Below are positions 1,430 to 52,554 of a stretch of 64,000 nucleotides of DNA, in pieces. The stretch comes from Malacoraja senta (Eukaryota), in the NCBI GenBank assembly GCA_038087875.1, contig CM075983.1, positions 36,394,001 through 36,458,000 on the forward strand. The letters are read 5' to 3'. Every line of letters starts with the position of its first letter. Within the stretch, counting starts at the first letter, position 1. The position numbers and the translations under genes are program-made. Below the pieces are notes generated by a model. The model saw only the letters and a list, made by a program, of their open reading frames with translations, ran no database searches and was not told the DNA's origin.

Positions 1430-4400
1430 CAATCCCAGGAGTGCAGGCCACAGACATAGAACCACACATCATTTCTTAACTGTACACCTCTCTTGTAGGA
1501 AGCAGCTGCTTGACTGTGAAACATATTTCTGATCAATATGAACTTCGGCCAATAGCCCTCTGCAGCATTAACAGTTATTGGTAACATCCACCCCTCTTTG
1601 TCCTTCAGTAACAAAGTCAAACATTTTCAACCAGGCTGAACTGGACTTCAGTATGAAGTATCCAACAAAAGCTGTCTAAATGGGCATAACATTCAGCTGT
1701 TTGAAAGCAGACAGCTAGGAATAATTTCTAGGCCATTGTTAAACAATGCTCTTCAACCTCACCCATTAAGGAGAAATTCCTGTTCTTCCAACATGAATAT
1801 GCAACAGTCAGGAAGTTTTTTTCCCCCAGCAATATCAAACCAACACTTTACACCGGTAGTATTTATTTTATTTACACCAACCGTATTGCAATTCCACTAC
1901 AACCTTAGAGTTACTTTTACAAAAACAGAGATTGAAAGCCATGTGCTTCTCTCATTTCACACCGTATTGTGCACTAAAACATAATAAAAGATGCACCTGG
2001 CTTACAGGGCTCAGGCAATACTTTACGATGCAGATCAGCAGTAAAATGAAGGCTTTGAATTGCTTCCTCCTCTTACAGATCACACTCACATCAATTACAG
2101 CAATCATGTCACTTTGTGTCCTTTTAAAAACTTTGTTTAATTAGTGACCTACAATATAAGCAATTCATTAACCTTTCACGTACAAAGCTTGAGTCCCAAA
2201 TAATTGAATAACTCTCAGACACGATTGGCTTGCTCTTTTTAAAGGCATTTTCTTGCATTACTGAATCAGCACGAGTGGGTCTCACGGGGTTTATGAATCT
2301 GCCAAATATAAACTGGCTGCCCTCTATTCAGCCATTAGCAATGGACCCCCATCTGTACTTGGGGCTATGAATCTGCACTCAGTATTGCCACCTGCTACAA
2401 CAGTCTTGTTAATGCAGTCAGGCTGACTGTGCATCTGTGAGCTAGCTCTCTGTATAGAAGCTGCATTGTATCTGTATGGTGCATTTGCCCAGCTCAGTGC
2501 CAGTTCTGAGCTCATACTATACTCTTTTTTTAAGATACAGAACCTGTATGTATAAATGCTTAATGACCTCAGGATATCTCACAACAGTTTAAAACCAGTA
2601 GCATCGTGTTGTAACGAAGGACACAGCAGCCATTATGTGCACACCAAAATCACCCATGTGATGTTGGCCTGATAATGTGATGTTTAGAACTGATGTTGGC
2701 TGTGTGGTGAGTATCAGACAATCAGAAGTCCATATCATCATTTGGAATCATATTAACTGTGCAGCAGGATCTATGATTGGAGATTTTTTTTTAATTAATC
2801 ACTGTAAAGCAGCTGATGTCAGCATAACATCTGCTCAGTGAACAGTGTATTGATTCAAAACCAAATGCATTTTCTGGCACTTTTTATATAGAAAAAATAC
2901 CTTGAGGAAATGTTATGATGCAAAGTCTGACAATGAGACATAAAGAAATATTATGGCAAATTACTAATAATAGCAGATTTTAGCAATGATCTGTAAGAGG
3001 AGAGAACCACAAATTATGATAAATGGAACCTTCCCTCCCTACTAACTACTCAATCGCAATTCCAAGAACACACCAGTTGCTTCCCAGTGGACAAAAGAAC
3101 CCCTTCAGGAAAGCTATACCCCAGGCAGCTCACATGTGCCTCCTAGTGGCTGAGTCTGACACCACAAATGTAAGCTGGAGAACTGGTTCCCCGACATCCT
3201 CAGTTGATCACAGCAAGTCAAAACATGGAGAACTCTCTCCACATTACCAAAAAGAACACCCTGATCTCCACAGCGATAAGACAAAGCTATGACTCCTGCG
3301 TACATTTTATTCAAATGTAATTATGTGCCTCAGTTCAAAATATTAAATTGAGTACTTGTATTCTATTGATTGTTGTATTTGGTGGTCTTTGTTTTTGAGT
3401 TGCATGTTTGGAAGTAGCTGTTTCTCTGTGTTTTTTGGCAGGATGTACCAAATACCTCCCTTGTTGCTAAAACTGAGATTCAAATGAATGCACAGTATTT
3501 TCCAGCCCACTCTTTCCCCCTCAACAAGTCCCTAGAAGCAGAAAATCAGTTCCCTTTCCATAAATATGTGCATGCATCTCAGTTTGATAATTGAAGTTTT
3601 GAAAAACAGTTGTTTATTTAATGTGCATTTTAAAGACTGTGACATTGTGAAGGCCTGGTCCATGCTTGTTTTAGCATGTCATATCCCCTCCCCCACCCTC
3701 CTCCTCCACCCCTTTATTGAACGTCAGGCTGTCTACAAAGGTCAAAGTAAATGATTAGCAGTTGGTGCATTTTAAATGTTTCATTAATTATGAGACATTT
3801 CCTACTTGTGACACAATCTCAATAATATGCATAGAGTGCAAAGATTTATAGAACACATCTGGACATTTGGACTATCATTTTATTAGCAAAAACCACAAAA
3901 TATGAGTAAATTCTGCTTCAGTTGTAGTTGCTAGTTTTCCCTCGTCCCTCTGGGCCATATTTTGGCAAAAAGGACAATATTGAAGTTTTACAGGCGCAGC
4001 TCGAAGCTGGCTACCACAGTGCATGCAGCTTCTCCAAGTGCAAGCTGGCCAAAAGTGCTGCAATGTAACAACTACCCCATTCAAAGAAATGTGTCATCTC
4101 CTCTTTGTCTCTCCGTCTTTCCCAACCCCCATCACTTCCACCACCCACCTTGCTTACATTGTCAGATACCTTGTAATGCTAGCAAGCTGATCTCATTCTA
4201 ATACATCCTGGAGCACAGTCTTGTCGTTCCAATGGTTTCATCGCATTGTTTCAGAAAAGTTTAGTGTAAATTTAAACAGGCAAGAGTTACAAACCCAGTA
4301 CATTTCAGTCTTTCCATTGTCAATGAATTTCATCAGACATTCTTTTTAACAGGGGGGTGAAATTAAGCTGGAGGTGTTTTGTTTCATTTAGCCAATATGA

Positions 4401-8100: not shown

Positions 8101-9200
8101 TTCATCTCCCAATATATTTATAATAGCACTATTGATCTCCCACTACTTGTGTTTGTTTCTAAACGATTCTCATTTGTTTCTGCATTCAAACTTCCAGGAT
8201 TTCCTTCTTGTTTTCAGTGTAACTTTTTACAGCTCATGGAAACTTTCACAAACATGTCCATGCTTTCTGTTTTGTTTTCTGAGAATAAAGATTAAAGCAA
8301 TCAATATGTCCTCCCTGTGTTCTTGTTGATGCATCAAAAAGTTTTTCTAGTCCAAACATTTTCACTCTCTTCTATGTTCCACTTTTTTCAGCTACTGTTG
8401 TTACTTCACAACATAACAATCATCTCCTGTTTAATGTTTCAAAAATATCTTAACCTCTTCCTTGCTGTTGTTTCATTTTACAACATATATTGCCAAATCC
8501 TTTGTTTCAGCTTTCACACGCCACAATGTCTGAAAATGACCTGCCTAAAGCAACACTCTCCAGTACCACAAAGTGAATGTTGAAGTTCAAGTATCTTCAG
8601 AAGTGTTCCAAGCAAGGCATTTGATCAAAGATGCTGCTGCGTCCAGCATGGCTCACAATCCACCCCTCAGTCACCCTGATGGTGGAGTAACAGAAATCTT
8701 ACATATCGTTGCAGCACAAGTCAATTGAAGCTTTGTGCAGAGAGCCTAATACGTCAGCACCACTGTTTCACTCACCCTGTTTGCCATATAAAATGTCCAG
8801 GAAAGAATGAGCAGTCCCATTAATTGTATCATTATGTAGCTAATTTGCTCTCCCTTTAATCCTTTTTTAAGTTGAATTTACAATGAAAAGAAATAAGTAA
8901 AAGTAAAATCCAAAACATTCACAACTCCAACACTTGTTTGAATTGAGCCAACTTTACTGAGCCAGTTACCATGTGCTTGTTAACTCCTCGAAAGATAATT
9001 TAAAAAATATGTATGTTTTGTTGAAGAAAAACTAGGTCCAACTAACATTTACTTTGTAAAACTGCAATTCTTTCCAACATCAACTTGATTATCAAAATCA
9101 CATGGCAATAGGAGTGAAACTGATCAAACCATCAATTAAAGGTGGAATCAATAGTCAAGTACCAATTTGGGGTTTGCATGTAAAATGGATGAGTGAAAGG

Positions 9201-9209
9201 ACTCACCTC
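9201..9209 (-). other. Splice donor ending the PCDH19 coding exon (GAG|GTGAGT, intron starts at 9206)
   Basis: Consensus donor right after ...PLPE, where similarity to PCDH19 ends; phase 0. Confidence 0.9.
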
Positions 9210-11663
9210 TGGAAGGGGCATCCCGTTGATGATGAGGTCTGGCTGTTGTTGGGAGCTCTGGGTGTTAGTGAAAGTGTGATACACGTGGTTTCCACTGGCG
9301 TTCCTGGAGTTCTGATTCTCCACATTTAGAAAGGTAGCCTCCGACCTGCGACAACCCAAGGGCAGAGTTTGCTGGTGGTAGTCGAAGTAGTTCAGGGAGG
9401 AGGTGAGGGAAGAGCAGCTGACCACGTTCATTTTATCAGTCTCCTCCATGTCTCTGGGCACGAGCCTGATATCATTCTTGTTGATCTTATTCTTTTTCTT
9501 CGGTTTCTTCTGCTGTCCATAAGAATACTCCGCCACCCTACAGTTGTAAGTCCTGATCTCCTTATTGTCTCGCTTGCACTTGACTGCTACAAAGATCATG
9601 GTCACGAAAAGGATTGCAGCGATGGACCCCAAGGCGATGATGAAGATTAACGATAGGTTCAGGGACCCTGTCGACTCCTGGGCATCTAAGCCAGGGGAGA
9701 GATAGACGGCGACCAAGGCAGTGGCGGAGAGGGCAGACTTGCCGTGGTCCTGCGCCACCACGATCAGTTCATAACTGATCTCGGCCCCGTCTCCGAAACT
9801 TCTGGTGGTCCTGATTTCCCCACTCGTTTGATCCATCTCGAAGAAACCTCGGTCACCATCCACGATGCCGTAGGTCAAGCGGCCGTTGTCGCCTTCGTCG
9901 TAGTCGTCAGCTTTGACCACTGTCACCAAGTAGCCAGAGCCGACGTTCCTGGGGATGTAGACATCGGTGGTGCCATTGACCAAAGGCGGCGCCGTGATAA
10001 TGGGCACATTGTCATTGACGTCCAGGACAAACACCTTCACCGTGCTGTTGCTCTCCAGGGCGGGCGTACCCCCATCTTTGGCCATGACCTTAAACTCGAA
10101 CGACCGGGTCTGCTCGTAGTTGAAGGACCTGAGTGCGTATACGTCTCCCGAGGTGGGGTTGATGGACACGTAGGTGAAGACGGGCATGTCCCTCACCTGC
10201 GACGGGACTATCTGGTAGGAGACGCTGCCGTTCAGCCCCAAATCTACGTCCCTGGCGGACACGGAGAGGAGGTGCGAGCCGGGGGTGTTGTTCTCCCGCA
10301 CGCTGACCTGGTAGAAAGGCTTGGTGAAGTGAGGAGGGTTGTCGTTCTCGTCCGTGATGCGGACGGTGAAGGACTTGGTGGATTGGAGCGAGGGGGAGCC
10401 GCCGTCCTTGGCCTGGATGGTCAGGTTGTAGAAGTCCCTCTGCTCCCGGTCCAACCTCCCATCCACCAGGATGGTGTAGAAGCTCTCGTACTCCTGCAGT
10501 TTGAACGGGACGGCGCCCAACAGTTCGCACTGGACTCTGCCGTTGGCGCCGGAGTCCTGGTCGGAGACTCGCACCAGGCCGATTACGTAGCCGGGAGGAG
10601 CGACCTCGCTCACCTCCACCGTCTCACTGTTGACCGAGAACAGAGTGATGACCGGCACATTGTCGTTCACGTCCACCACGTTCACCGTCACCTTGCAGTG
10701 GGCCGGGATGGAGTTGGGTCCCAGGTCCTTCGCCTGCACGTCGATCTCGTAGATGCTCCCCTCCTCGTAGTCGAGGTTGCCCTTCACCGTGATGGCCCCG
10801 GTCCGGGGCTCCAGTTTGAAGAGTTGCCTGGTGTTGTCCGATACGTAACTGTTGAAGGAATAGACGATTACGCCGTTTGTCCCCTCGTCCGGGTCCGAGG
10901 CATTCAGGTCGATGACCAGCGAGTTGACCGGTGCGTTCTCCAGCACATTGACCGTGTAAGTGGTTTGTTCAAACACCGGGTAGTTGTCGTTGGAGTCGAT
11001 GACTTTAACGTTGAGTTGGGCCGTGCCCAGGTTAGGTGGTTTGCCCCCGTCCAGGGCCGTGATCATGTAGCTGTAGTGAGACTGGACCTCCCTGTCCAGA
11101 GCTTTCTCCACCACCAGCTCGGCAAAGCGGGAGCCGTCCCCCCGACTCTTGATTTCCAGCCCGAACAGTTCGTTGGGCGTTATCTGGTAGGTCTGCACTC
11201 CGAAATCGCCCGAGTCAGGGTCGTAGGCGCTCTCCAGGGGGATCCTGGTGCCCGGGCTGGCCGTTTCCGAGATCTCCAGGTCGATCTGCTCGGTGGGGAA
11301 GCTGGGCGAGTTGTCGTTGATGTCCAGGATCTCCACCTTGACCACACAGATCTCCATGGAATTGACCATCTCCTCCAGCGAAATCACGCATTTGCTGTTC
11401 TGGCCGCACAGCAGGTCTCGGTCGATCTTCTGCTTGGTTACCAGCAGCCCACTGACCGGGTTGATCTCCAGCAGATGCGGCGCTGAGTTGGACAGGACGC
11501 GGAAAACAGGCACCGGCTGCTCCCAAGTTGAGAAGCCAGCGTCTTTCGCTATGTTTCCGATCACTGTCCCGGCTCTCTCCTCTTCCACCACCGAGTATTT
11601 CAAATTAATCACAGCAGCGGCCCGAGCCCAGAAGAGCAGCACAATCAGCAACATCAAACCCAT
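9207..11663 (-). CDS. PCDH19: Protocadherin-19 (delta-2 protocadherin), large coding exon: signal peptide, EC1-EC6, TM, proximal cytoplasmic tail; partial CDS, later exons not found in window
   Basis: Translation matches PCDH19 as I know it: [136 protein letters not shown]. Repeated DxNDN, LDRE and AxDxG calcium motifs. ATG at 11663 (ggcATGG) directly precedes a hydrophobic signal peptide; an alternative in-frame ATG is at 11696. Ends in phase 0 at GAG|GTGAGT. Confidence 0.96.
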
Positions 11664-11759
11664 GCCCGAGCGGTACCTGTTGATTTCTGGATTCATCACA
11701 AACGGCTTCGCGAGGCTGGCATGATGGAAAACAACGACACACAAATCCTCACCGTCCCT

Positions 11760-29758: not shown

Positions 29759-29916
29759 GTAGGAAGGAACAGCAGATGCTGGTTTAAATTGAAGATAGAC
29801 ATAAAATGCTGGAGTAACTCGGTGGGACAGGCAGCATATCTGGAGAGAAGGAATGGGTGGCATTTCGGGTGGTCTGAAACGTCACCCATTCCTTCTCCAG
29901 AGATACTGCCTGTCTA
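29759..29916. mobile_element. Penelope pLTR fold-back mini-element with exact 16-bp TSD
   Basis: Inverted arms (ctggagagaaggaatgggtg / cacccattccttctccag); tctgcactggatatgt at 29743-29758 and 29917-29932. Confidence 0.88.
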
Positions 29917-33125: not shown

Positions 33126-33332
33126 AAGGTAGACAATGGTGCTGGAGAAACTCAGCGGGTGCAGCAGCATCTATGGAGCGAAGGAAATAGGCAACGTTTT
33201 GGGCCGAAACCCTTCTTCAGACTCGCGTCTCGTTGCCTATTTCCTTCGCTCCATAAATGCCTCCGCACCCGCTGAGTTTCTCCAGCACTTTTGTCTACCT
33301 TCGATTTTCCAGCATCTGCAGTTCCTTCTTAA
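33126..33332. mobile_element. Penelope pLTR fold-back mini-element with exact 13-bp TSD
   Basis: About 70-bp inverted arms 33126-33196 / 33231-33301; acaaatctgccag at 33113-33125 and 33333-33345. Confidence 0.92.
33190..33223 (-). ncRNA. Minimal hammerhead ribozyme core, G12 mutated
   Basis: Minus strand agt CTGAAGA A GGG tttcgg CCC aAAA CG TT gcc. Confidence 0.6.
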
Positions 33333-45300: not shown

Positions 45301-45568
45301 TCGAGGCGCGGATTAGGTGTGAGGTTTAGTTAAATTAAGGTGGGGTTAAGGTGTGAGGTTTATTTGAGTGGCGAGGTTCAGTGAGGTACGGTTTAGTCGA
45401 GGCGAGGTTTAGTCGAGGCAAGGTTTAGGTGTGAGGAGAAGAGTCATGGGATATGGGGAGAAGGCAGGAATGGGGAACTGATTGTGGATGATCATAGAAA
45501 TGTCTATGGTAGATAAAAATGCTGGAGAAACTCAGCGGGTGATGCAGCATCTATGGAGTGAAGGAATA

Positions 45569-45603
45569 GGTGGCGTTTCGGGTCGAGACCCTTCTTCAGA
45601 CTG
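45569..45603 (-). ncRNA. Minimal hammerhead ribozyme core in pLTR, U16.1 mutated
   Basis: Minus strand cagt CTGAAGA A GGG tctcga CCC GAAA CG cC acc. Confidence 0.65.
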
Positions 45604-46177
45604 ATGTGGAGGTGGGGGGGAGAAAAAAGGAAGAGGCGGAAACAGTAGGCTGTGGGAGAGCTGGGAAGGGGAGGGGAAGGAGGGAGAAATTGGAGAAGTA
45701 AATGTTCATACCGCTGGGGTAAAAAACAACCCAAGCGAAATTTGAGGAGCTGCTCCTCCAATTTGCGGTGGGTCTACCTCTGGCCATGGAGGAGGCCCAG
45801 GACAGAAAATTCGGAATGGGAGGCGGGAGTTGAAGTGCTGAGCCACCGGGAGATCAGATTGGTTAATGCGAACTGAGCGGAGGTGTTGGGCGAAGCGATC
45901 GCCAAGCCTGCACTTGGTCGCACCAATGTAGAGCAGTTGACACCTAGAACAGTGGATGCAATAGATGAGGTTGGAGGAGGTGCAGGTGATGGGAAGGGAC
46001 GAATAGACCATCTGCCTGTGAGAATCTGCCTCACCTGGAAAGACTGTTTGGGTCGGATGGAGTCGAGGGGAGAGGTAAAGCGATAAGTGTAGCATTTCCT
46101 GCCGTTGCAAGGGAAAGTACCAGGGGAGGGGATGGTATGGGAGGGAAGGGTCAAAAAGGGGCAGAGAGTTGTGTGTC

Positions 46178-46334
46178 AAGAGAGAGCAAGATAGGGCTCT
46201 TAAAGATGTGAGTCAGTGGATATAGGGAGAAGGCAGGAACGGGGTACTGATTGGGGATGATCAGCCATGATCACATTGGATGGTGGTGCTGGCTCGAAGG
46301 GCCGAATGGCCTACTCCTGCACCTATTGTCTATT
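46178..46334 (+). mobile_element. CR1 3' tail inserted in the Penelope element
   Basis: ggagaaggcaggaacggggtactga...ggctcgaagggccgaatggcctactcctgcacctattgtctatt. Confidence 0.85.
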
Positions 46335-47036: not shown

Positions 47037-48222
47037 GCTAGCACTATGGCGCAGTTAGCAGAGCCCTGCCTTACAGTGTCACAGACACCAGTTCAATCAG
47101 ACCAGAGACACCAGTTCAATAGGACATCGGGTGCTCTCCATGTGGACTTTGCACATTCTTCCTGTAACCGCATGGGTTTCCTCTGACTGCACTATTTTCC
47201 TCCCACACCTCAAAGGTGTGAAGGTTGGTATAGAAACATAGAAACATAGAAAATTGGTGCAGGAGTAGGCCATTCGGCCCTTCGAGCCTGCACCACCATT
47301 CAATATGATCATGGCTGATCATCCAACTCAGTATCCTGTACCTGCCTTCTCTCCATACCCCCTGATCCCTTTAGCCACAAGGGCCACATCTAACTCCCTC
47401 TTAAATATAGCCAATGAACTGGCCTCAACTACCTTCTGTTGCAGAGAATTCCACAAATTCACCACTCTCTGTGTGAAAAATGATTTTCTCATCTCGGTCC
47501 TAAAAGACTTCCCCCTTATCCTTAAACTGTGACCCCTTGTTCTGGACTTCCCCAACATCGGGAACAATCTTCCTGCATCTAGCCTGTCCAACCCCTTAAG
47601 AATCTTGTAAGTTTCTATAAGATTCCCCCTCAATCTTCTAAATTCTAGCGTGTACAAGCCGAGTCTATCCAGTCTTTCTTCATATGAAAGTCCTGCCATC
47701 CCAGGAATCAGTCTGGTGAACCTTCTCTGTACTCCCTCTATGGCAAGAATGTCTTTCCTCAGATTTGGTGACCAAAACTGTACGCAATACTCCAGGTGTG
47801 GTCTCACCAAGACCCTGTACAACTGCAGTAGAACCTTCCTGCTCTTATACTCAAATCCTTTTGCTATGAATGCTAACATACTATTCGCTTTCTTCACTGC
47901 CTGCTGCACCTGCATGCCTACTTTCAATGACTGGTGTACCATGACACCCAGATCTCGTTTCATCTCCCCTTTTCCTAATCGGCCACCATTCAGATAATAG
48001 TCTACTTTCCTGTTTTTGCCACCAAAGTGGATAACCTCACATTTATCCACATTATATGTTAATTGGTTGCCGTAAATTGCCCCTGGTGTGAGGGTGAGTG
48101 TGAGAATTCGGGGAAGTTGATGAAAAGGTGGGGGAGTAACACATGGGAGTAATGTAGGACTAGTGTAAAGGTTAGGCGCGGTCACAGCAGTTTGAAGAGC
48201 CCGTTTCCATGCTGCATGTCTC
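47037..48222 (+). mobile_element. HE1-like V-SINE split by a CR1 insertion (about 47232-48056)
   Basis: Head and V domain up to ...aggttggta, resuming at tgttaattggttgccgtaaattgcccct...cccgtttccatgctg. Confidence 0.75.
47232..48056 (-). mobile_element. Young 5'-truncated CR1 (HER1-like), open ORF2 C-terminus
   Basis: YNVDKCEVIHFG...LVRPHLEYCVQFWSP...GYGEKAGTGY* uninterrupted; (TTCTATGT)n tail. Confidence 0.95.
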
Positions 48223-48434
48223 AGCTTGCCTTCTCTGATCGTGAGAATCTCAGGAGGAAGCCAAGGCAATCCATGCACTTGGCAATTCTGGCACAAGAGA
48301 GCTGTTAATAATCAATCTTGCCTATAGCACCTACAAGCCGGCTCTTCTGGATCTGAGGACTATTGCTCTTAGAACCTTCCCCTCGAATTAACTATGTTCC
48401 TTTCCACCACATTCTTGACAAAATGTAGCAGGAC

Positions 48435-48871: not shown

Positions 48872-49350
48872 GTTAAGGATTAGGCTTATTATTGTCGCAT
48901 GTATCGATTGGATTCTATCCAATCAAATCAGAAAATACTATACATATACACCATCAAGCCAAGCCAAAGTACAACAAGTAGATCAAAGGGAAGTTATAGA
49001 GTGTTGACTATAGTTCTCAGCATAATAGTGTAAAATATCCTGAAACATATCCTGCAGTGAGGTAAAGGAGAATGAGACTGTGCCCTAGTTTGGGGAAGGA
49101 CTGTTCTGAAGCCTGGTAACAAATAGGAAGAAGCTGTTCCTGAGTCCAGTGATGCTGTCAAGCTTCTGTATCTTCTGCCAGATGGGAGCAGGGAGAAGAA
49201 GGAATGAACGGGGTGGGAACGTCTTTGATAAGGTTAGCTGCTCTTCTGAGGCAGCATGAAGTTTAGATGGAGTCAATGGTGGGAAATCAGGTCTGTGTGA
49301 TGGACTGGGCTACATCCACAACTCTCCGTAATTTCTTGCAGTCTTGCTGT
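48872..49350 (-). mobile_element. Rex1/Babar-like LINE 3' end
   Basis: Minus strand encodes SLLPSGRRYRSL and then LRNSFF; 3'UTR ends gacaataataagc. Confidence 0.7.
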
Positions 49351-49736
49351 TCCAAAAGCAAGCTATGCCTGTAGAGCTCTCATCTGATGAATTGCTCGTG
49401 GAATTTTCGGTTCTGCGTGTTGTGTGCTGCTCTTACATCTTAATGTAGCCCAAAGTTATACTTTCATCAAAATGGCACCTAATTTTTCAACCTGTCTGGT
49501 ACTGCTCCTGGCATGGCCATCCACACTCCGTATTGAACCCGGGTTGACCCCTGGCTTAGTCGTAACAGTAGAGGGAGGGATTATGTAGGACAATGAAATT
49601 AAAATGGTGTACATTTCCGCTGCTGTGGATGGCTCACAATGTCTCGTGGATATCCACTTTTAAGCTGTGATATCAAATCTATTCCATCTAGTGCAATTAT
49701 CTTGGACTTTTATCCTCACAAGGACTGGCTATGGTC

Positions 49737-49933
49737 TAGAAGGAACTGCAGATGCTGGAAAATCGAAGGTAGACAAAAATGCTGGAGAAACTCAGCGGGT
49801 GCAGCAGCATCTATGGAGCGAAGGAAATAGGCCTGTCTGAAGAAGGGTTTCAGTCCGAAACGTTGCCTATTTCCTTCGCTCCATAGATGCTGCCGCACCC
49901 GCTGAGTTTCTCCAGCATTTTTTGTCTACCTGT
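49737..49933. mobile_element. Penelope pLTR fold-back mini-element with exact 9-bp TSD
   Basis: Arms 49767-49832 / 49865-49931 (one mismatch, one 1-nt bulge); gctatggtc at 49728-49736 and 49934-49942. Confidence 0.92.
49833..49867 (+). ncRNA. Minimal type I hammerhead ribozyme core, all core nucleotides intact
   Basis: ctgt CTGAAGA A GGG tttcag TCC GAAA CG TT gcc; predicted cleavage after 49864; stem III reduced to the palindrome ACGT. Confidence 0.72.
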
Positions 49934-51092
49934 GCTATGGTCATATCCACCTGTGTTACTAGGGATTTGTGTTTTGGCCGTAGGAAATCTTTAAGGCAAA
50001 GACGATTTCCCCACAACCTGATCAACACAATCTAGTCGGTTGGTCCTTTGGAACTTGGCCAACTTGCTCATTGGTGGTACTATCAAGCCATACTTGATGA
50101 ACACTAAAGTCCTTATGCAGCTTTGGGCCTTGCTACATTCAGTGGTGCTTCCAAATGTTATTCAACATGCAGGAGCACTGAATCATCACCTGATTTATTT
50201 GGATTTAATTTCAGTTGTAGAAGTTATGGATAGGATAGGTTTGGAGGGATATGAACCAAACACAGGCTGGTTTGTCTAGTGTAGCTGGGACATGTTGGTC
50301 GGTGTGGGCAAGTTGGGCCGTAGGGCCTGTATCCACGCTGTATCACTCTATAACTCTGTTGTTCCATTCATTTCCAGTTTAAGTCAAGCTTGTCAATTTA
50401 TAGTAGTTATTGAGAATAGTGAGACAAGACTGCATGGAATGTAAAGCATTGAACATTTACAGAGAATCACAAGCAAAAAAAACATGAAAATGAATGAGTG
50501 GTTGGATTGCCTTGAATTAAGAATGACTCATATAATATCAATTATTGGAACTCTAGAAATTTCAAAGAACATTTCAAAGCTCCGTAGGCAATATTTTAAA
50601 AAACCTGTTGGAATTTTGTAAGGATATGAAGTTAGTAGGTGACGACTAAAAGGACCTACATTTTCAGAATGACGTTAAATGTTTTTAGACAGATGATAAA
50701 TTATGATTGTAATTTTCTCTTAATGAGCAGTTACAGGTATTGAGTACGCAATGAAGTTCTCTTCTACTGTATATCCTCTATGATTTGTTGCATGGAAGAA
50801 AGAAATAGGCAGCTACTTTTTCTAGCGTTTTGACCTAGGAAACTGTCTGTCAAATAGCCTTGCTACAAATTGATCCATGTAGCCAAACTAAGCTTCTTAC
50901 CTCTCACATGCGCTTCCATTAAAACACTTTCATTTACCTGCAACTATGCTTGTTTTCATTTCAAAATCCTTCTGCAACATTAGTTCATGACTATTCCTCC
51001 TTGAAGCTCAACTACATTAGTTTTCTCGAAAACATTTCTGCCCACCAAATGTCACACAGAGTCCTAAATTCTACTGCTGACGTAATATTTAC

Positions 51093-52554
51093 GACCGTAG
51101 AACCAACCAATCCCCATCTACTAATACTCTCCTCCGCCTAGCGGAGCTGGTCCTTACCCTTAATAACTTTTCGTTTGACTCCTCCCATTTCCTCCAAATA
51201 CAAGGTGTAGCTATGGGCACGCGCATGGGCCCTAGCTATGCATGCCTCTTTGTAGGGTATTTGTTCGAGACGTACAGGGGCCCTATCCCCGAACTCTACC
51301 TCCGCTACATCGACAACTGCATTGATGCTACCTCCTGCACCCACACAACTCACTGACTTCATCCATTTCACCACTAACTTCCATCCGGCACTCAAATACA
51401 CCTGGACCATTTCTCACATTTCCTTACCATTTCTTGGCCTCACTATCTCCATTGCAGGTGATAGACTACTGACCGACATCCACTATAAATCCACGGACTC
51501 CTATGGATATCTGGACTACACTTCTTCCCACCCTGCTTCCTGTAACGACTCCATCCCCTACTCCCAATTCCTCCGTCTACGCCGCATCTGCACCCAGGAT
51601 GAGGTGTTCCACACCAGAGCATCAGAGATGTCCTCATTCTTCAGGGAACGGGGGTTCCCCTCGTACTATAGATGAGTCTCTCACCAGGGTCTCTTCTATA
51701 CCCCGTGACTCTGCTCTCACTCCCCATCCCCCCGCTCGTAAAAAGGGCAGAGTTCCCCTTGTCCTCACTTTCCACCCCACCAGCCATCACATACAACAAA
51801 TAATCCTCCGACATTTTCGCCACCTCCAACGTGATCCCACCACTTGCCACATCATCCCATCTCCTCCCCTGTCTGCTTTCCACAGAGACCGCGCCCTCCA
51901 TAACTCCCTGGTCAATTCGTCCCTTCCCACCCGAACCACCCCCTCTCTGGGCACTTTACCTTGCAACTGCAAGAAATGCTACACTTGTCGCTTTACCTCC
52001 CCCCTTGACTCCATTCAAGGACCCAAGCAGTCTTTGCAGGTGCGGCAGAGGTTCACCTGCACCTCCTCCAACCTAATCTATTGCATCCGCTGCTCTAGAT
52101 GACAGCTGCTCTACATCGGTGAGACCAAGCGTAGGCTTGGCGATCGCTTCGCCGAACACCTCCGCTTGGTTCGCAATAACCAACCTGATGTCCCGGTGCC
52201 TCAGCACTTCAATTCCCCCTCCTAATCCGAATCTGACCTTTCTGTCCTGGGCCTCCTCCATGGCCAGAGTGAGGACCACCGTAAGTTGGAGGAGCAGCAC
52301 CTCATATTTCGCTTGGGTAGTTTGCACCCCAGCGGCATGAACATAGACTTCTCTAATTTCAGGTAGTCCCTACTTTCTCCTCCCCTTCTCAACTCTCCCT
52401 CAGCCCACTGGCTCCTCCTCTTCCTTTCTTCTTCCCCCCCCCCCACCCCTCACATCAGTCTGAAGAAAGGTTTCGACCCAAAACGTTGCCTATTTCCTTC
52501 GCTCCATAGATGCTGCCTCACCCGCTGAGTTTCTCCAGCATTTTTGTCTACCTA
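51093..52554 (+). mobile_element. Young 5'-truncated Penelope-like (Neptune-type) retroelement: RT, Cys linker, GIY-YIG, pLTR; 10-bp TSD
   Basis: LVLTLNNFSFDSSHFLQIQGVAMGTRMGPSYA, LRYIDN, YLDYTSSHPASC, CNCKKCYTC, CTSSNLIYCIRCS...LYIGETKRRLGDRFAEH; few frameshifts; taatatttac at 51083-51092 and 52555-52564. Confidence 0.95.
52456..52490 (+). ncRNA. Minimal hammerhead ribozyme core in pLTR, G12 mutated
   Basis: cagt CTGAAGA A aGG tttcga CCC aAAA CG TT gcc. Confidence 0.6.

What the first reader, a model, noticed from the sequence alone, without database searches (positions are those of the whole stretch)
49737..49933. TSD-flanked ~200-bp hairpin element with an intact hammerhead ribozyme core as its loop
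Seen: 66/67-nt near-perfect inverted arms close a 32-nt loop reading ctgt-CTGAAGA-A-GGG-tttcag-TCC-GAAA-CG-TT, and the unit is flanked by an exact 9-bp TSD. Established: CUGAnGA...GAAA...UH is the hammerhead core, and Penelope-like elements are known to carry minimal hammerheads with a tiny palindromic stem III that cleave as dimers. Inference: the inverted arm could act as an extended stem I with a 4-nt bulge. The inverted copy also starts exactly at the predicted cleavage position (the complement of 49865 onward), as a cDNA of the 3' cleavage product would. This coincidence occurs in only this one copy.
Basis: partly seen in the sequence, partly recalled or inferred. Interest (0 to 1): 0.85.

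Follow-up and report, generated by a model that had tools for sequence, protein, structure and literature searches.

The report
Penelope-type fold-back mini insertion with hammerhead
This is a real, recently inserted ~195-bp fragment of a Penelope-like retrotransposon: two short copies of the element's ribozyme-bearing 3' end joined head to head, a layout already known for these elements. That one copy stops exactly at the ribozyme's cutting site is no more than chance would give.

Summary
Observation confirmed. Arms 49767-49832 and 49865-49931 are 98% complementary, the 32-nt loop carries every conserved hammerhead core base, and an exact 9-bp repeat flanks the unit. Contigs from three related species cross the site without the element. 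So it is a lineage-specific insertion, and the true TSD is probably 13 bp.

It is a short Penelope-like element (PLE) insertion of the known inverted type. One arm is a sense copy running from the hammerhead's 5' edge to the "no-tail" terminus. The other is an inverted copy carrying the 30-nt PLE "tail" at its outer end. In a longer window copy and in a Leucoraja erinacea locus, the same sequence lies just downstream of an RT/GIY-YIG ORF.

The ribozyme core is intact in sequence, but helix II is degraded and the catalytic fold is predicted 5-11 kcal/mol above the MFE. Helix III can form only in a dimer.

The claim that the inverted arm records a cleaved template is not supported. Among 49 arm copies in 174 kb, only this one ends at the site (~0.2 expected by chance). 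A family-wide contig lay-down shows no step there. The recurrent 5' end is the hammerhead's 5' edge instead.

The scan has noted this fold-back family in this genome many times before.

The parts
49725..49736 (.). Left copy of the target-site duplication (CTG-GCTATGGTC; exact 9-nt core at 49728-49736)
   Evidence: D2, exact 9-nt repeat; empty-site contigs of three related species join 49724 to 49930.
49737..49766 (-). 30-nt PLE 'tail', the segment between the two alternative 3' termini. It is present only on the inverted arm.
   Evidence: alignment: TCGATTTTCCAGCATCTGCAGTTCCTTCTA follows GTCTACCT in c1-inverted and c2-inverted, but not in c1-sense, c2-sense, c3 or c4. Literature: PMC8557442, PMC11167929.
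49767..49832 (-). Inverted arm: antisense copy of positions +1..+66 downstream of the hammerhead cleavage site. Its inner end is exactly at +1.
49833..49834 (.). 2-nt junction filler (CT) between the two copies
   Evidence: Canonical copies read ATCA before GTCTGAAGA. TSD-verified solo units start at G of GTCTGAAGA.
49835..49864 (+). Minimal hammerhead motif. GU, C3-A9 = 49837-43, bulged A 49844. Helix II is 49845-48/49853-56 with loop UUCA. G12-A15.1 = 49857-60, CG 49861-62, U16.1 49863, U17 49864. Predicted cleavage is 49864|49865.
   Evidence: No Rfam hit, but Rfam also misses the consensus-like copy c4.
49865..49929 (+). Sense arm (+1..+65), ending at the 'no-tail' terminus GTCTAC(CT). Bases 49930-31 (CT) could belong to the element end or to the TSD.
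49930..49942 (.). Right copy of the target-site duplication (CTGTGCTATGGTC)
33126..33332 (-). Sister fold-back (c2) of the same subfamily, with its own 13-bp TSD (33113-25 / 33333-45). Sense arm plus HHR lie at 33126-33222. The tail-bearing arm (33223-33332) reads GTCT[22 nt missing]CGTT|GCC, and its G12 is mutated.
45508..46179 (-). Longer 5'-truncated PLE copy (c4). The order is GIY-YIG-type ORF (45706-46179), pLTR with polypyrimidine tract, HHR (45572-45601), arm, no-tail end.
52458..52553 (+). Simple sense copy (c3) of the same subfamily with upstream pLTR. It ends at GTCTACCT and its G12 is mutated.

Best explanation
The unit is a dead-on-arrival, ~195-bp insertion made by an endonuclease-positive Penelope-like element (PLE) of a skate-like genome.

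What it consists of. It is two short cDNA copies of the same stretch of PLE RNA, the segment from the pLTR hammerhead to the internal sites where PLE reverse transcriptase starts. They are joined head to head.

How it most likely formed.
- The GIY-YIG endonuclease cut both target strands about 13 bp apart.
- Each 3'-OH primed reverse transcription at one of the two adjacent internal initiation sites. One started at ...GUCUACCU (right end, no tail). The other started ~30 nt further 3' (left end, with tail).
- The right-hand cDNA ran 95-97 nt, to the 5' edge of the hammerhead. That edge is the recurrent 5' terminus of this family's short units.
- The left-hand cDNA stopped after 96 nt.
- The two 3' ends were joined with 2 nt of filler, and repair duplicated the target.

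Status now. The hammerhead is a passenger. Its core bases survive, but helix II is weakened and it needs a partner molecule for helix III. No transcription or cleavage of this copy is shown. The coincidence of one arm's end with the cleavage site is best treated as chance.

Shown versus inferred. Shown: the insertion, the TSD, the two termini, the PLE linkage, and the fold energies. Inferred from PMC11167929 and PMC8557442: priming on both strands and joining of the cDNAs.
For: Insertion. Empty site in three related species; both junctions confirmed in contigs of the best-holding run. The arms differ by 1 substitution plus 1 indel in 66 nt, while the flanks differ 5-7% between species, so the insertion is young.

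PLE identity.
- In c4 the same pLTR-HHR-arm follows an ORF with a GIY-YIG motif (Pfam E 0.003).
- That ORF is 79% identical to L. erinacea P0002, which carries RVT_1 (5.6e-19) plus GIY-YIG.
- In L001 that ORF (10001-10711) is followed 56 nt later by the repeat (10767-10917).

Termini. Four no-tail ends fall at GTCTACC(T), and two tailed ends lie 30-33 nt further on. This matches the '30-40 bp tail, often at one end only' of PMC8557442. It also matches the two adjacent internal RT start sites and the cleavage and extension of both strands shown in vitro in PMC11167929.

Fold-backs.
- Seven fold-backs carry a full tail at one end only: c1, c2, c5, c7, c10, L003 5437-5624 and L002 1862-1982. An eighth junction, c6, has only a very short inverted piece and a tail on its sense arm. 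I saw no fold-back with a full tail at both ends.
- TSD lengths vary: 13, 13, 16 and 17 bp.

Recurrent 5' end at G of GTCTGAAGA. It is TSD-verified in two solo units (L002 3765-3896; L001 924-820) and is seen in at least four more arms.

Hammerhead state.
Against: - No PLE ORF lies inside this copy, so the link to the PLE machinery is by family.
- Priming on both strands has been shown only in vitro, for an Anolis Poseidon element. Those authors saw no strand preference between the two start sites, whereas here each fold-back has one tailed end.
- c1 and c2 share both inner breakpoints within 0-4 nt. That is unlikely for fully random truncation and hints at preferred RNA 5' ends or some other regularity.
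- The exact end at the cleavage site is also what a cleaved template would give.
Confidence: 0.78

Rival explanations
1. First reader's reading, nested within the PLE explanation. The inverted arm is a run-off cDNA made on the 3' product of in vivo hammerhead self-cleavage. Its inner end at C49832 would then be a fossil of ribozyme activity.
For: - The arm ends exactly at the complement of N1.1.
- cDNA ends in this family often coincide with a defined RNA position: the hot spot at the HHR 5' edge, 6-10 of ~30 resolved ends. So template-end run-off is a common way for arms to end.
- The best-supported 'go-back' joint in the family lay-down joins a 3' end to exactly the first base after the cleavage site (52545+GTG->52488, depth 381).
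- The PAc hammerhead cleaves when its protein is present (PMC11167929).
Against: - Only 1 of 49 arms in 174 kb ends there, and it is the copy that was picked for that reason. About 0.2 hits are expected by chance at any one position (P~0.19). Leaving it out, 0-1 of 48 gives an upper bound of roughly 7-10% for such ends.
- There is no step in depth at 52487|52488, and no loose-end class at the site among the best supported.
- The sister fold-back c2 continues 4 nt (AACG) past the site and is best read as an HHR with a 22-nt internal deletion.
- The subfamily has a GUU site, a 2-bp helix I and no helix III. PLE min-HHRs cleave poorly in vitro (PMC4209133).
- In Anolis, no RNA-seq ends were found at the site, and cleavage was not needed for insertion (PMC11167929).
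Confidence: 0.18
2. The fold-back is itself the mobile unit: a hairpin SINE or MITE-like element with terminal inverted repeats that moves as a whole. On this view c1 and c2 descend from a fold-back master copy.
For: - c1 and c2 align over their whole length (87.7% over 204 nt).
- They have the same order of parts: tail, arm, junction, HHR, arm.
- Their sense arms start at the same base.
Against: - The junction fillers differ (CT against AACGAGACGCGA).
- Other fold-backs have different inner breakpoints: -11/-28, -14/-8, -28/-12, +44/+4.
- Both outer ends coincide with the two termini that single-arm copies also use, as expected if each end is an RT start site.
- TSD length varies from 13 to 17 bp, unlike a transposase-made TSD.
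- The arms are unequal (one-sided tail).
Confidence: 0.04
3. The hairpin-embedded hammerhead is a working RNA device at this locus. Candidates are a retrozyme-like circRNA source, a self-cleaving hairpin, or a small-RNA precursor.
For: - The core bases are intact here, unlike c2, c3 (G12A) and c4 (U16.1C).
- A 66-bp stem would be a Dicer substrate if transcribed.
- Generic miRNA-precursor models score on it, but below threshold.
Against: - There is a single HHR, so no unit can be excised. Retrozymes need tandem HHRs (PMC7229834 abstract; bioRxiv 10.64898/2026.07.22.740005).
- Helix II is unstable and the catalytic fold lies 5-11 kcal/mol above the MFE.
- The element is absent from three related species, so it is not conserved.
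- The Rfam miRNA hits occur on both strands and reflect only the long stem.
- No expression data exist for this copy.
Confidence: 0.03

Closest known systems
Inverted / partial-tandem insertions of endonuclease-positive Penelope-like elements (Penelope/Poseidon, Neptune clades), with pLTR, hammerhead and one-sided 30-40-bp 'tail' (Craig et al. 2021, PMC8557442; Frangieh et al. 2024, PMC11167929)
   Same: - Head-to-head 5'-truncated copies.
- A 30-nt tail at one end only.
- Two alternative 3' termini ~30 nt apart.
- The hammerhead upstream of the termini (67 and 96 nt here; about 85-92 nt in PAc).
- TSDs of variable length.
- Linkage to an RT plus C-terminal GIY-YIG ORF.
   Different: - Extremely short: about 96 nt per arm, with no ORF and no pLTR body.
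- The family's short units have a sharply defined 5' end at the hammerhead's 5' edge. I did not find this described in the papers read.
- Here each fold-back uses one tailed and one untailed start, whereas PAc showed no strand preference in vitro.
PLE minimal hammerhead ribozymes (Cervera & de la Pena 2014, PMC4209133)
   Same: - CUGANGA core.
- An unpaired base at the 5' end of helix II.
- GAAA.
- Helix III reduced to a 2-nt palindromic insertion (ACGU), so activity is expected only as a dimer.
- A very short helix I (2 bp) in the canonical context, as in D. virilis Penelope.
   Different: - In this copy the inverted arm supplies a 66-bp 'helix I', offset by a 4-nt bulge.
- Helix II is weakened to G-C, G-C, G.U, U.G.
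- The cleavage triplet is GUU, rather than the wider family's GUC.
Animal non-LTR retrozymes (Cervera & de la Pena 2020, PMC7229834; Li et al. 2026 preprint, 10.64898/2026.07.22.740005)
   Same: Short, non-autonomous, hammerhead-bearing sequences related to PLE pLTRs and present at high copy number.
   Different: Retrozymes are head-to-tail tandem units whose two hammerheads release a monomer that circularises. This unit has one hammerhead and an inverted, not tandem, partner.
L1 'twin priming' 5' inversions (own knowledge: Ostertag & Kazazian 2001)
   Same: The second target strand also primes reverse transcription, giving an inverted segment joined to a direct one inside a single TSD-flanked insertion.
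   Different: In twin priming the inverted and direct parts are different, adjacent parts of one RNA. Here both arms copy the same 66 nt and both outer ends are RT start sites. One copy in L002 (8088-8200) does look like the L1 type.

Membership tests
Penelope-like element (EN+) insertion | The repeat is physically linked to an ORF with a reverse transcriptase followed by a C-terminal GIY-YIG endonuclease | tested here: met
   Met for the family, not for this copy.
- c4: ORF 45706-46179(-) has a GIY-YIG motif (E 0.003, below the Pfam cutoff) directly upstream of pLTR-HHR-arm.
- It is 79% identical to L. erinacea P0002 = RVT_1 (5.6e-19) + GIY-YIG.
- In L001 the ORF is followed 56 nt later by the repeat.
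Penelope-like element (EN+) insertion | [quoted passage not shown] | tested here: met
   A 30-nt tail lies at 49737-66 only. The same one-sided pattern holds in seven other fold-back junctions.
Penelope-like element (EN+) insertion | An inverted 5'-truncated copy adjacent to a direct copy, forming inverted repeats | tested here: met
Penelope-like element (EN+) insertion | A hammerhead motif in the pLTR | tested here: met
   Sequence motif at 49835-64. The family consensus is GTCTGAAGAAGGGTYTCGACCCGAAACGTC, read from loose ends and from copies.
Penelope-like element (EN+) insertion | A true insertion with a target-site duplication | tested here: met
   Empty site in three related species. The TSD is 13 bp (12/13 now) with an exact 9-bp core.
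Penelope-like element (EN+) insertion | Preference for AT-rich targets or microsatellites | tested here: inconclusive
   The consensus of flanks before the tail terminus is A/T-rich across the family (loose ends at 49738). This copy's target, CTGTGCTATGGTC, is not.
Hammerhead ribozyme (PLE min-HHR type) | Conserved core: C3 U4 G5 A6 N7 G8 A9, G12 A13 A14, A15.1/U16.1, H17 | tested here: met
   All are present at 49837-43, 49857-60 and 49863-64. Sister copies c2 and c3 have G12A, and c4 has U16.1C.
Hammerhead ribozyme (PLE min-HHR type) | A stable helix II closing the core | tested here: not met
   GGGU/GUCC gives 2 G-C plus 2 G.U pairs. The hairpin alone is predicted unfolded (0 kcal/mol), against -3.4 (c4) and -3.7 (c2). 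The MFE pairs GUUUC with GAAAC and so sequesters G12-A15.1.
Hammerhead ribozyme (PLE min-HHR type) | Helix I flanking the cleavage site | tested here: inconclusive
   The 66-bp arms pair from G1.1 outward but leave a 4-nt bulge next to C3. The register with canonical U2.1.G1.1 and G2.2-C1.2 costs a further ~6 kcal/mol.
Hammerhead ribozyme (PLE min-HHR type) | Helix III, or a palindromic substitute that allows a dimer | tested here: met
   A15.1-C-G-U16.1 (ACGU, within AACGUU) is self-complementary. The monomer cannot close it (sequence; concept from PMC4209133).
Hammerhead ribozyme (PLE min-HHR type) | A match to the curated Rfam hammerhead covariance models | tested here: not met
   No hit at gathering score or at E<=10. 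The test is uninformative, because the consensus-like copy c4 is missed too.
Hammerhead ribozyme (PLE min-HHR type) | Self-cleavage | not testable with these tools
   Needs in vitro transcription or 5'-OH RNA end mapping.
Non-LTR retrozyme | Head-to-tail repeats with a hammerhead in each unit, so that a monomer can be released | tested here: not met
   There is one hammerhead, and the partner copy is inverted and lacks it.
MITE / DNA-transposon fold-back | Symmetric terminal inverted repeats and a TSD of fixed length | tested here: not met
   The termini are unequal (one-sided tail). TSDs are 13, 13, 16 and 17 bp in different copies. Single-arm copies use the same termini.

The most novel reading that the evidence does not exclude
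Copy ends in this family may report the 5' ends of the template RNA. The sharp, TSD-verified terminus 2 nt upstream of C3 would then be the start of the PLE short transcript. The arm ending at +1 in this copy would be a run-off on a self-cleaved template. If so, a genome-wide count of ends at +1 against -30 would give a direct in vivo measure of hammerhead cleavage during PLE retrotransposition, which has never been shown.
Probability: 0.18. Interest if true: 0.6.

Novelty: new member of a known kind. Interest (0 to 1): 0.25.

Why it matters
As it stands, this is one more copy of a very abundant Penelope-derived repeat, in a layout already described for these elements. Its main value is as a clean, datable example. 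There is an empty site in three relatives and the arms are near-identical. It shows both alternative reverse-transcription start sites used in one event, one on each strand. That fits, and slightly sharpens, the in vitro model of PLE integration.

The role of hammerheads in the PLE life cycle is still open. This copy alone does not bear on it. The family's precise 5' terminus at the ribozyme's edge, and the huge copy number in skates, would however make a proper genome-wide breakpoint test easy.

Tried and rejected
- Rfam scans at gathering score and at E<=10. No hammerhead hit, but the models also miss consensus-like copies, so the result is uninformative. The miRNA/psbJ hits occur on both strands and are generic long-stem matches.
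- Family-wide breakpoint histogram from public contigs. Only the best-supported rows are returned, and these are Logan contigs, not reads. I could see a smooth depth profile with no step at the site, and no loose-end class there among the best, but not a full histogram.
- Automated local-alignment calling of 5' ends. It mis-called several copies: TSD-verified -30 ends were called -36 and -42, and BLAST HSP ends were taken as truncations. I hand-curated instead, so the counts are approximate.
- Searched the window for the c2 filler and for the tandem joint seen: nothing.
- Reading the filler CCTG as templated upstream sequence. Rejected because a solo unit with a 13-bp TSD (L002) starts at G of GTCTGAAGA, and its 'CCTG' there is target sequence.
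- Equal-length arms (96 vs 95-97 nt in c1, 98-102 vs 97 in c2) as a sign of coupled synthesis. This does not hold in c5 or other fold-backs, so it is left as a remark.
- MITE, retrozyme and small-RNA-precursor readings: see rivals.
- Notes of this scan. Many first-reader notes describe the same family, but none is a follow-up with data.

Full report
OBSERVATION.
- Arms 49767-49832 and 49865-49931 are complementary, apart from one mismatch and one extra T.
- They enclose 32 nt reading CC-U-GU-CUGAAGA-A-GGGU-UUCA-GUCC-GAAA-CG-UU.
- GCTATGGTC is repeated exactly at 49728-36 and 49934-42.
- The arm on the left ends at C49832, the complement of G49865, which is the first base after the predicted hammerhead cleavage site.
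- The left arm continues 30 nt further outward (49737-66) with no counterpart on the right.

IT IS A REAL, RECENT INSERTION. I laid public contigs on 49300-50400.
- Single contigs from three related species (runs X3, X5, X12; flanks 5-7% diverged) run 49300-49724 and then straight on at 49930-50250. The 205 nt between are absent.
- The empty site reads AAGGA|CTGTGCTATGGTC|ATATCC. The duplication is therefore most simply 13 bp, with the left copy having since lost one T. The element proper is 49737-49929, and the CT at 49930-31 is shared between the element end and the target.
- Contigs of the best-holding run (X1, possibly the assembly's own sample) cover both junctions without mismatch.
- The two arms differ by one substitution and one indel in 66 nt, far less than the flank divergence between species. 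The insertion is young.

WHAT THE ARMS ARE. Other copies in the window show that the sense strand of the family reads: pLTR body, ACATCA, GTCTGAAGAAGGGTYTCGACCCGAAACGTY, cleavage site, GCCTATTTCC...GTCTACCT, and optionally TCGATTTTCCAGCATCTGCAGTTCCTTCT.
- The right arm plus loop of the finding is therefore an ordinary sense copy. It starts at G of GTCTGAAGA and ends at GTCTAC(CT).
- The left arm is an antisense copy of +1..+96, including the optional 30 nt.
- Copies c3 (52458-52553) and c4 (45508-) end at GTCTACC(T) without the extension. The inverted arms of c1 and c2 carry it.

LINK TO PENELOPE-LIKE ELEMENTS.
- In c4 the pLTR-hammerhead-arm lies directly downstream of an ORF (45706-46179, minus strand). 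This ORF carries the GIY-YIG motif with its C-x2-C insertion (Pfam E 0.003; sequence).
- That segment is 79% identical to a Leucoraja erinacea protein, P0002, which has RVT_1 (5.6e-19) followed by GIY-YIG.
- In the L. erinacea locus L001 that ORF (10001-10711) is followed 56 nt later by the same repeat (10767-10917).
- RT plus C-terminal GIY-YIG, a pLTR with a hammerhead, complex inverted insertions and a 30-40-bp tail at one end are the published hallmarks of EN+ PLEs (PMC8557442).
- Frangieh et al. (PMC11167929) showed in vitro that a Poseidon PLE nicks and extends both target strands. Reverse transcription starts at two adjacent internal RNA sites, and the tail is the stretch between them. 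The hammerhead cut site lies roughly 85-92 nt upstream of those sites. Here the distances are 67 and 96 nt.
- The finding thus shows, in one event, one start at each site on opposite strands.

THE FAMILY.
- Summed contig depth over the arms is 10^5-10^6 times single-copy depth in all four species laid. This is not a copy number, but it shows a very abundant repeat.
- I fetched five 20-24-kb loci of L. erinacea. With the window this makes 174 kb and 49 arm copies.
- Fold-backs are common. Examples are c2 (33126-33332, TSD 13), c5 (29759-29916, TSD 16), c7, c10, L003 5437-5624 (TSD 17) and L002 1862-1982.
- Seven fold-backs carry a full tail at one end only, and I saw none with a full tail at both ends. 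c6 (a very short inverted piece joined to a tailed sense arm) fits the same pattern.
- The scan's first readers have noted this fold-back family in this genome many times.

THE HAMMERHEAD.
- All conserved core bases are present, and the extra A before helix II is the 'usual bulged base' of PLE min-HHRs (PMC4209133). The ACGU palindrome stands in for helix III, so activity is expected only in a dimer. Such motifs cleaved poorly in vitro (same paper).
- In this copy helix II is GGGU/GUCC: two G-C and two G.U pairs. ViennaRNA predicts no stable hairpin for it (0 kcal/mol), against -3.4 and -3.7 for c4 and c2.
- The MFE of the loop region pairs GUUUC with GAAAC. The two hammerhead-compatible conformers are 5.3 and 11.1 kcal/mol less stable.
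- The 66-bp stem can serve as helix I only with a 4-nt bulge abutting C3.
- Rfam finds no hammerhead, but it also misses the consensus-like c4, so that result says little.
- 'Intact' is therefore true of the core letters only.

THE COINCIDENCE AT THE CLEAVAGE SITE. I hand-curated the 5' ends of the 49 arms. The automated calls were too crude. Positions are relative to the cleavage site, and -30 is the G of GTCTGAAGA.
- About a dozen arms continue into the pLTR.
- Six end firmly at -30 to -32, and up to four more do so less clearly. Two of the six are solo units with clear TSDs: L002 3765-3896 (GAAGCATCACCTG) and L001 924-820 (CTATTATTGT). The sense arms of c1 and c2 are also among them.
- Two end at -28.
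- About twelve are scattered inside the hammerhead and about seven inside the arm.
- Exactly one ends at 0, and it is the finding itself. L004 12249 is doubtful.

Roughly 20 scattered ends over ~95 positions give about 0.2 expected at any one position, so P of at least one is ~0.19. This copy was also selected for the coincidence.

Laying family contigs on c3 gives a depth that rises smoothly across 52487|52488. Bin-to-bin increments are 2.2, 2.6, 1.6 and 4.3 million. The largest, at 52494, is explained by a sister subfamily being clipped. No loose-end class at the site is among the best supported.

The sister fold-back c2 runs 4 nt past the site. It is best read as GTCT[22 nt deleted]CGTT, a hammerhead with an internal deletion, so its tail-bearing arm originally reached the -30 edge too.

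Against this stand two hints. cDNA ends in this family clearly favour one defined RNA position, so template run-off is common. And the best-supported go-back joint joins a 3' end to exactly 52488. I therefore keep the cleaved-template reading as a rival at about 0.18, not as the explanation.

MECHANISM (best reading).
- Staggered cuts about 13 bp apart were made on both strands.
- Each 3'-OH primed on PLE RNA at one of the two internal start sites.
- The untailed cDNA ran to the template's recurrent 5' terminus at the hammerhead's edge.
- The tailed cDNA stopped 96 nt in.
- The two 3' ends were joined with CT filler.

Shown: the insertion, the TSD, the two termini, the PLE linkage and the hot spot. 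Inferred: dual priming and joining (from PMC11167929 and PMC8557442), and the reason for the 96-nt stop.

The element has no ORF and is absent from relatives. I have no evidence of any present function.

COMPARISON AND NOVELTY. This is a new copy of a known kind of structure. It is not a retrozyme, because it has a single hammerhead and an inverted partner. It is not a MITE, because its termini are unequal and TSD length varies. I did not find the sharply defined 5' terminus of the short units at the ribozyme's 5' edge described in the papers I read. It deserves a genome-wide check, but it lies outside the finding as given.

Noticed in passing
L002:3765-3896 (TSD 3752-64 / 3897-3909); L001:820-924 minus strand; window 49835, 33222: Short units of the family have a precise 5' terminus at the G two bases upstream of hammerhead C3 (GTCTGAAGA). 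It is TSD-verified in two solo copies and shared by several fold-back arms. In longer copies this position is preceded by a long polypyrimidine tract plus CAG, and it sits in TCAGTCT, which fits an initiator consensus (own knowledge). This suggests the template RNA starts, or is processed, right at the ribozyme's edge.
   Followed up: partly
window 52545 -> 52488 (table 5c): The best-supported 'go-back' joint in the family-wide contig lay-down joins ...GCATTTTT+GTG directly to the first base after the hammerhead cleavage site (depth 381, roughly 15-20 copies' worth). It could be a tandem array of hammerhead-less arm units. Its origin is unexplained, and it was not found in the window.
   Followed up: partly
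window 49752-49762 and 49779-49789 (and their complements in the right arm): Each of the two alternative 3' termini is preceded by a copy of the same motif: TTYTCCAGCAT...GTYT(A)CCTTC, with ATGCTGGARAA repeated 27 nt apart on the antisense strand (D1). The duplicated module may be what positions the two RT start sites.
   Followed up: no
window 33223-33234: The junction of fold-back c2 reads TCGC-GTCT-CGTT before the arm. That is the first 4 and last 4 bases of the hammerhead with the middle 22 nt missing, a sign of deletion near the palindrome centre.
   Followed up: partly
L002:8088-8200: A copy whose inverted piece is only the hammerhead (+3 to -29), joined at a CTTCAG/TCTGAAG centre to a sense copy that jumps from TCTGA to +37. 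This looks like L1-type twin priming with a microhomology jump, unlike the usual PLE fold-back.
   Followed up: no
window 9132-11744 (minus strand): An 870-aa ORF with five or more cadherin repeats (Pfam 4.7e-83), probably a protocadherin variable exon. The finding may lie in a protocadherin cluster.
   Followed up: no
window 47328-48296 (minus strand): A 322-aa ORF equal to the C-terminal part of a CR1/jockey-like LINE reverse transcriptase (hits up to 96% in ENA contigs, 92% in L. erinacea). It lies between c4 and the finding and is unrelated to the PLE.
   Followed up: partly
window 49300-49373 and 50226-50372: Two other very high-copy repeats flank the locus, with depth 10^5-10^7 in all four species. 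They were not identified.
   Followed up: no
window 49865-49931 and family arms: The arm contains an ATG 22 nt after the cleavage site (CCATAGATGCTGCC). It opens a frame that reads through both RT start sites. This recalls PAc, where the ORF begins at the hammerhead and RT starts inside the ORF's 5' end.
   Followed up: no
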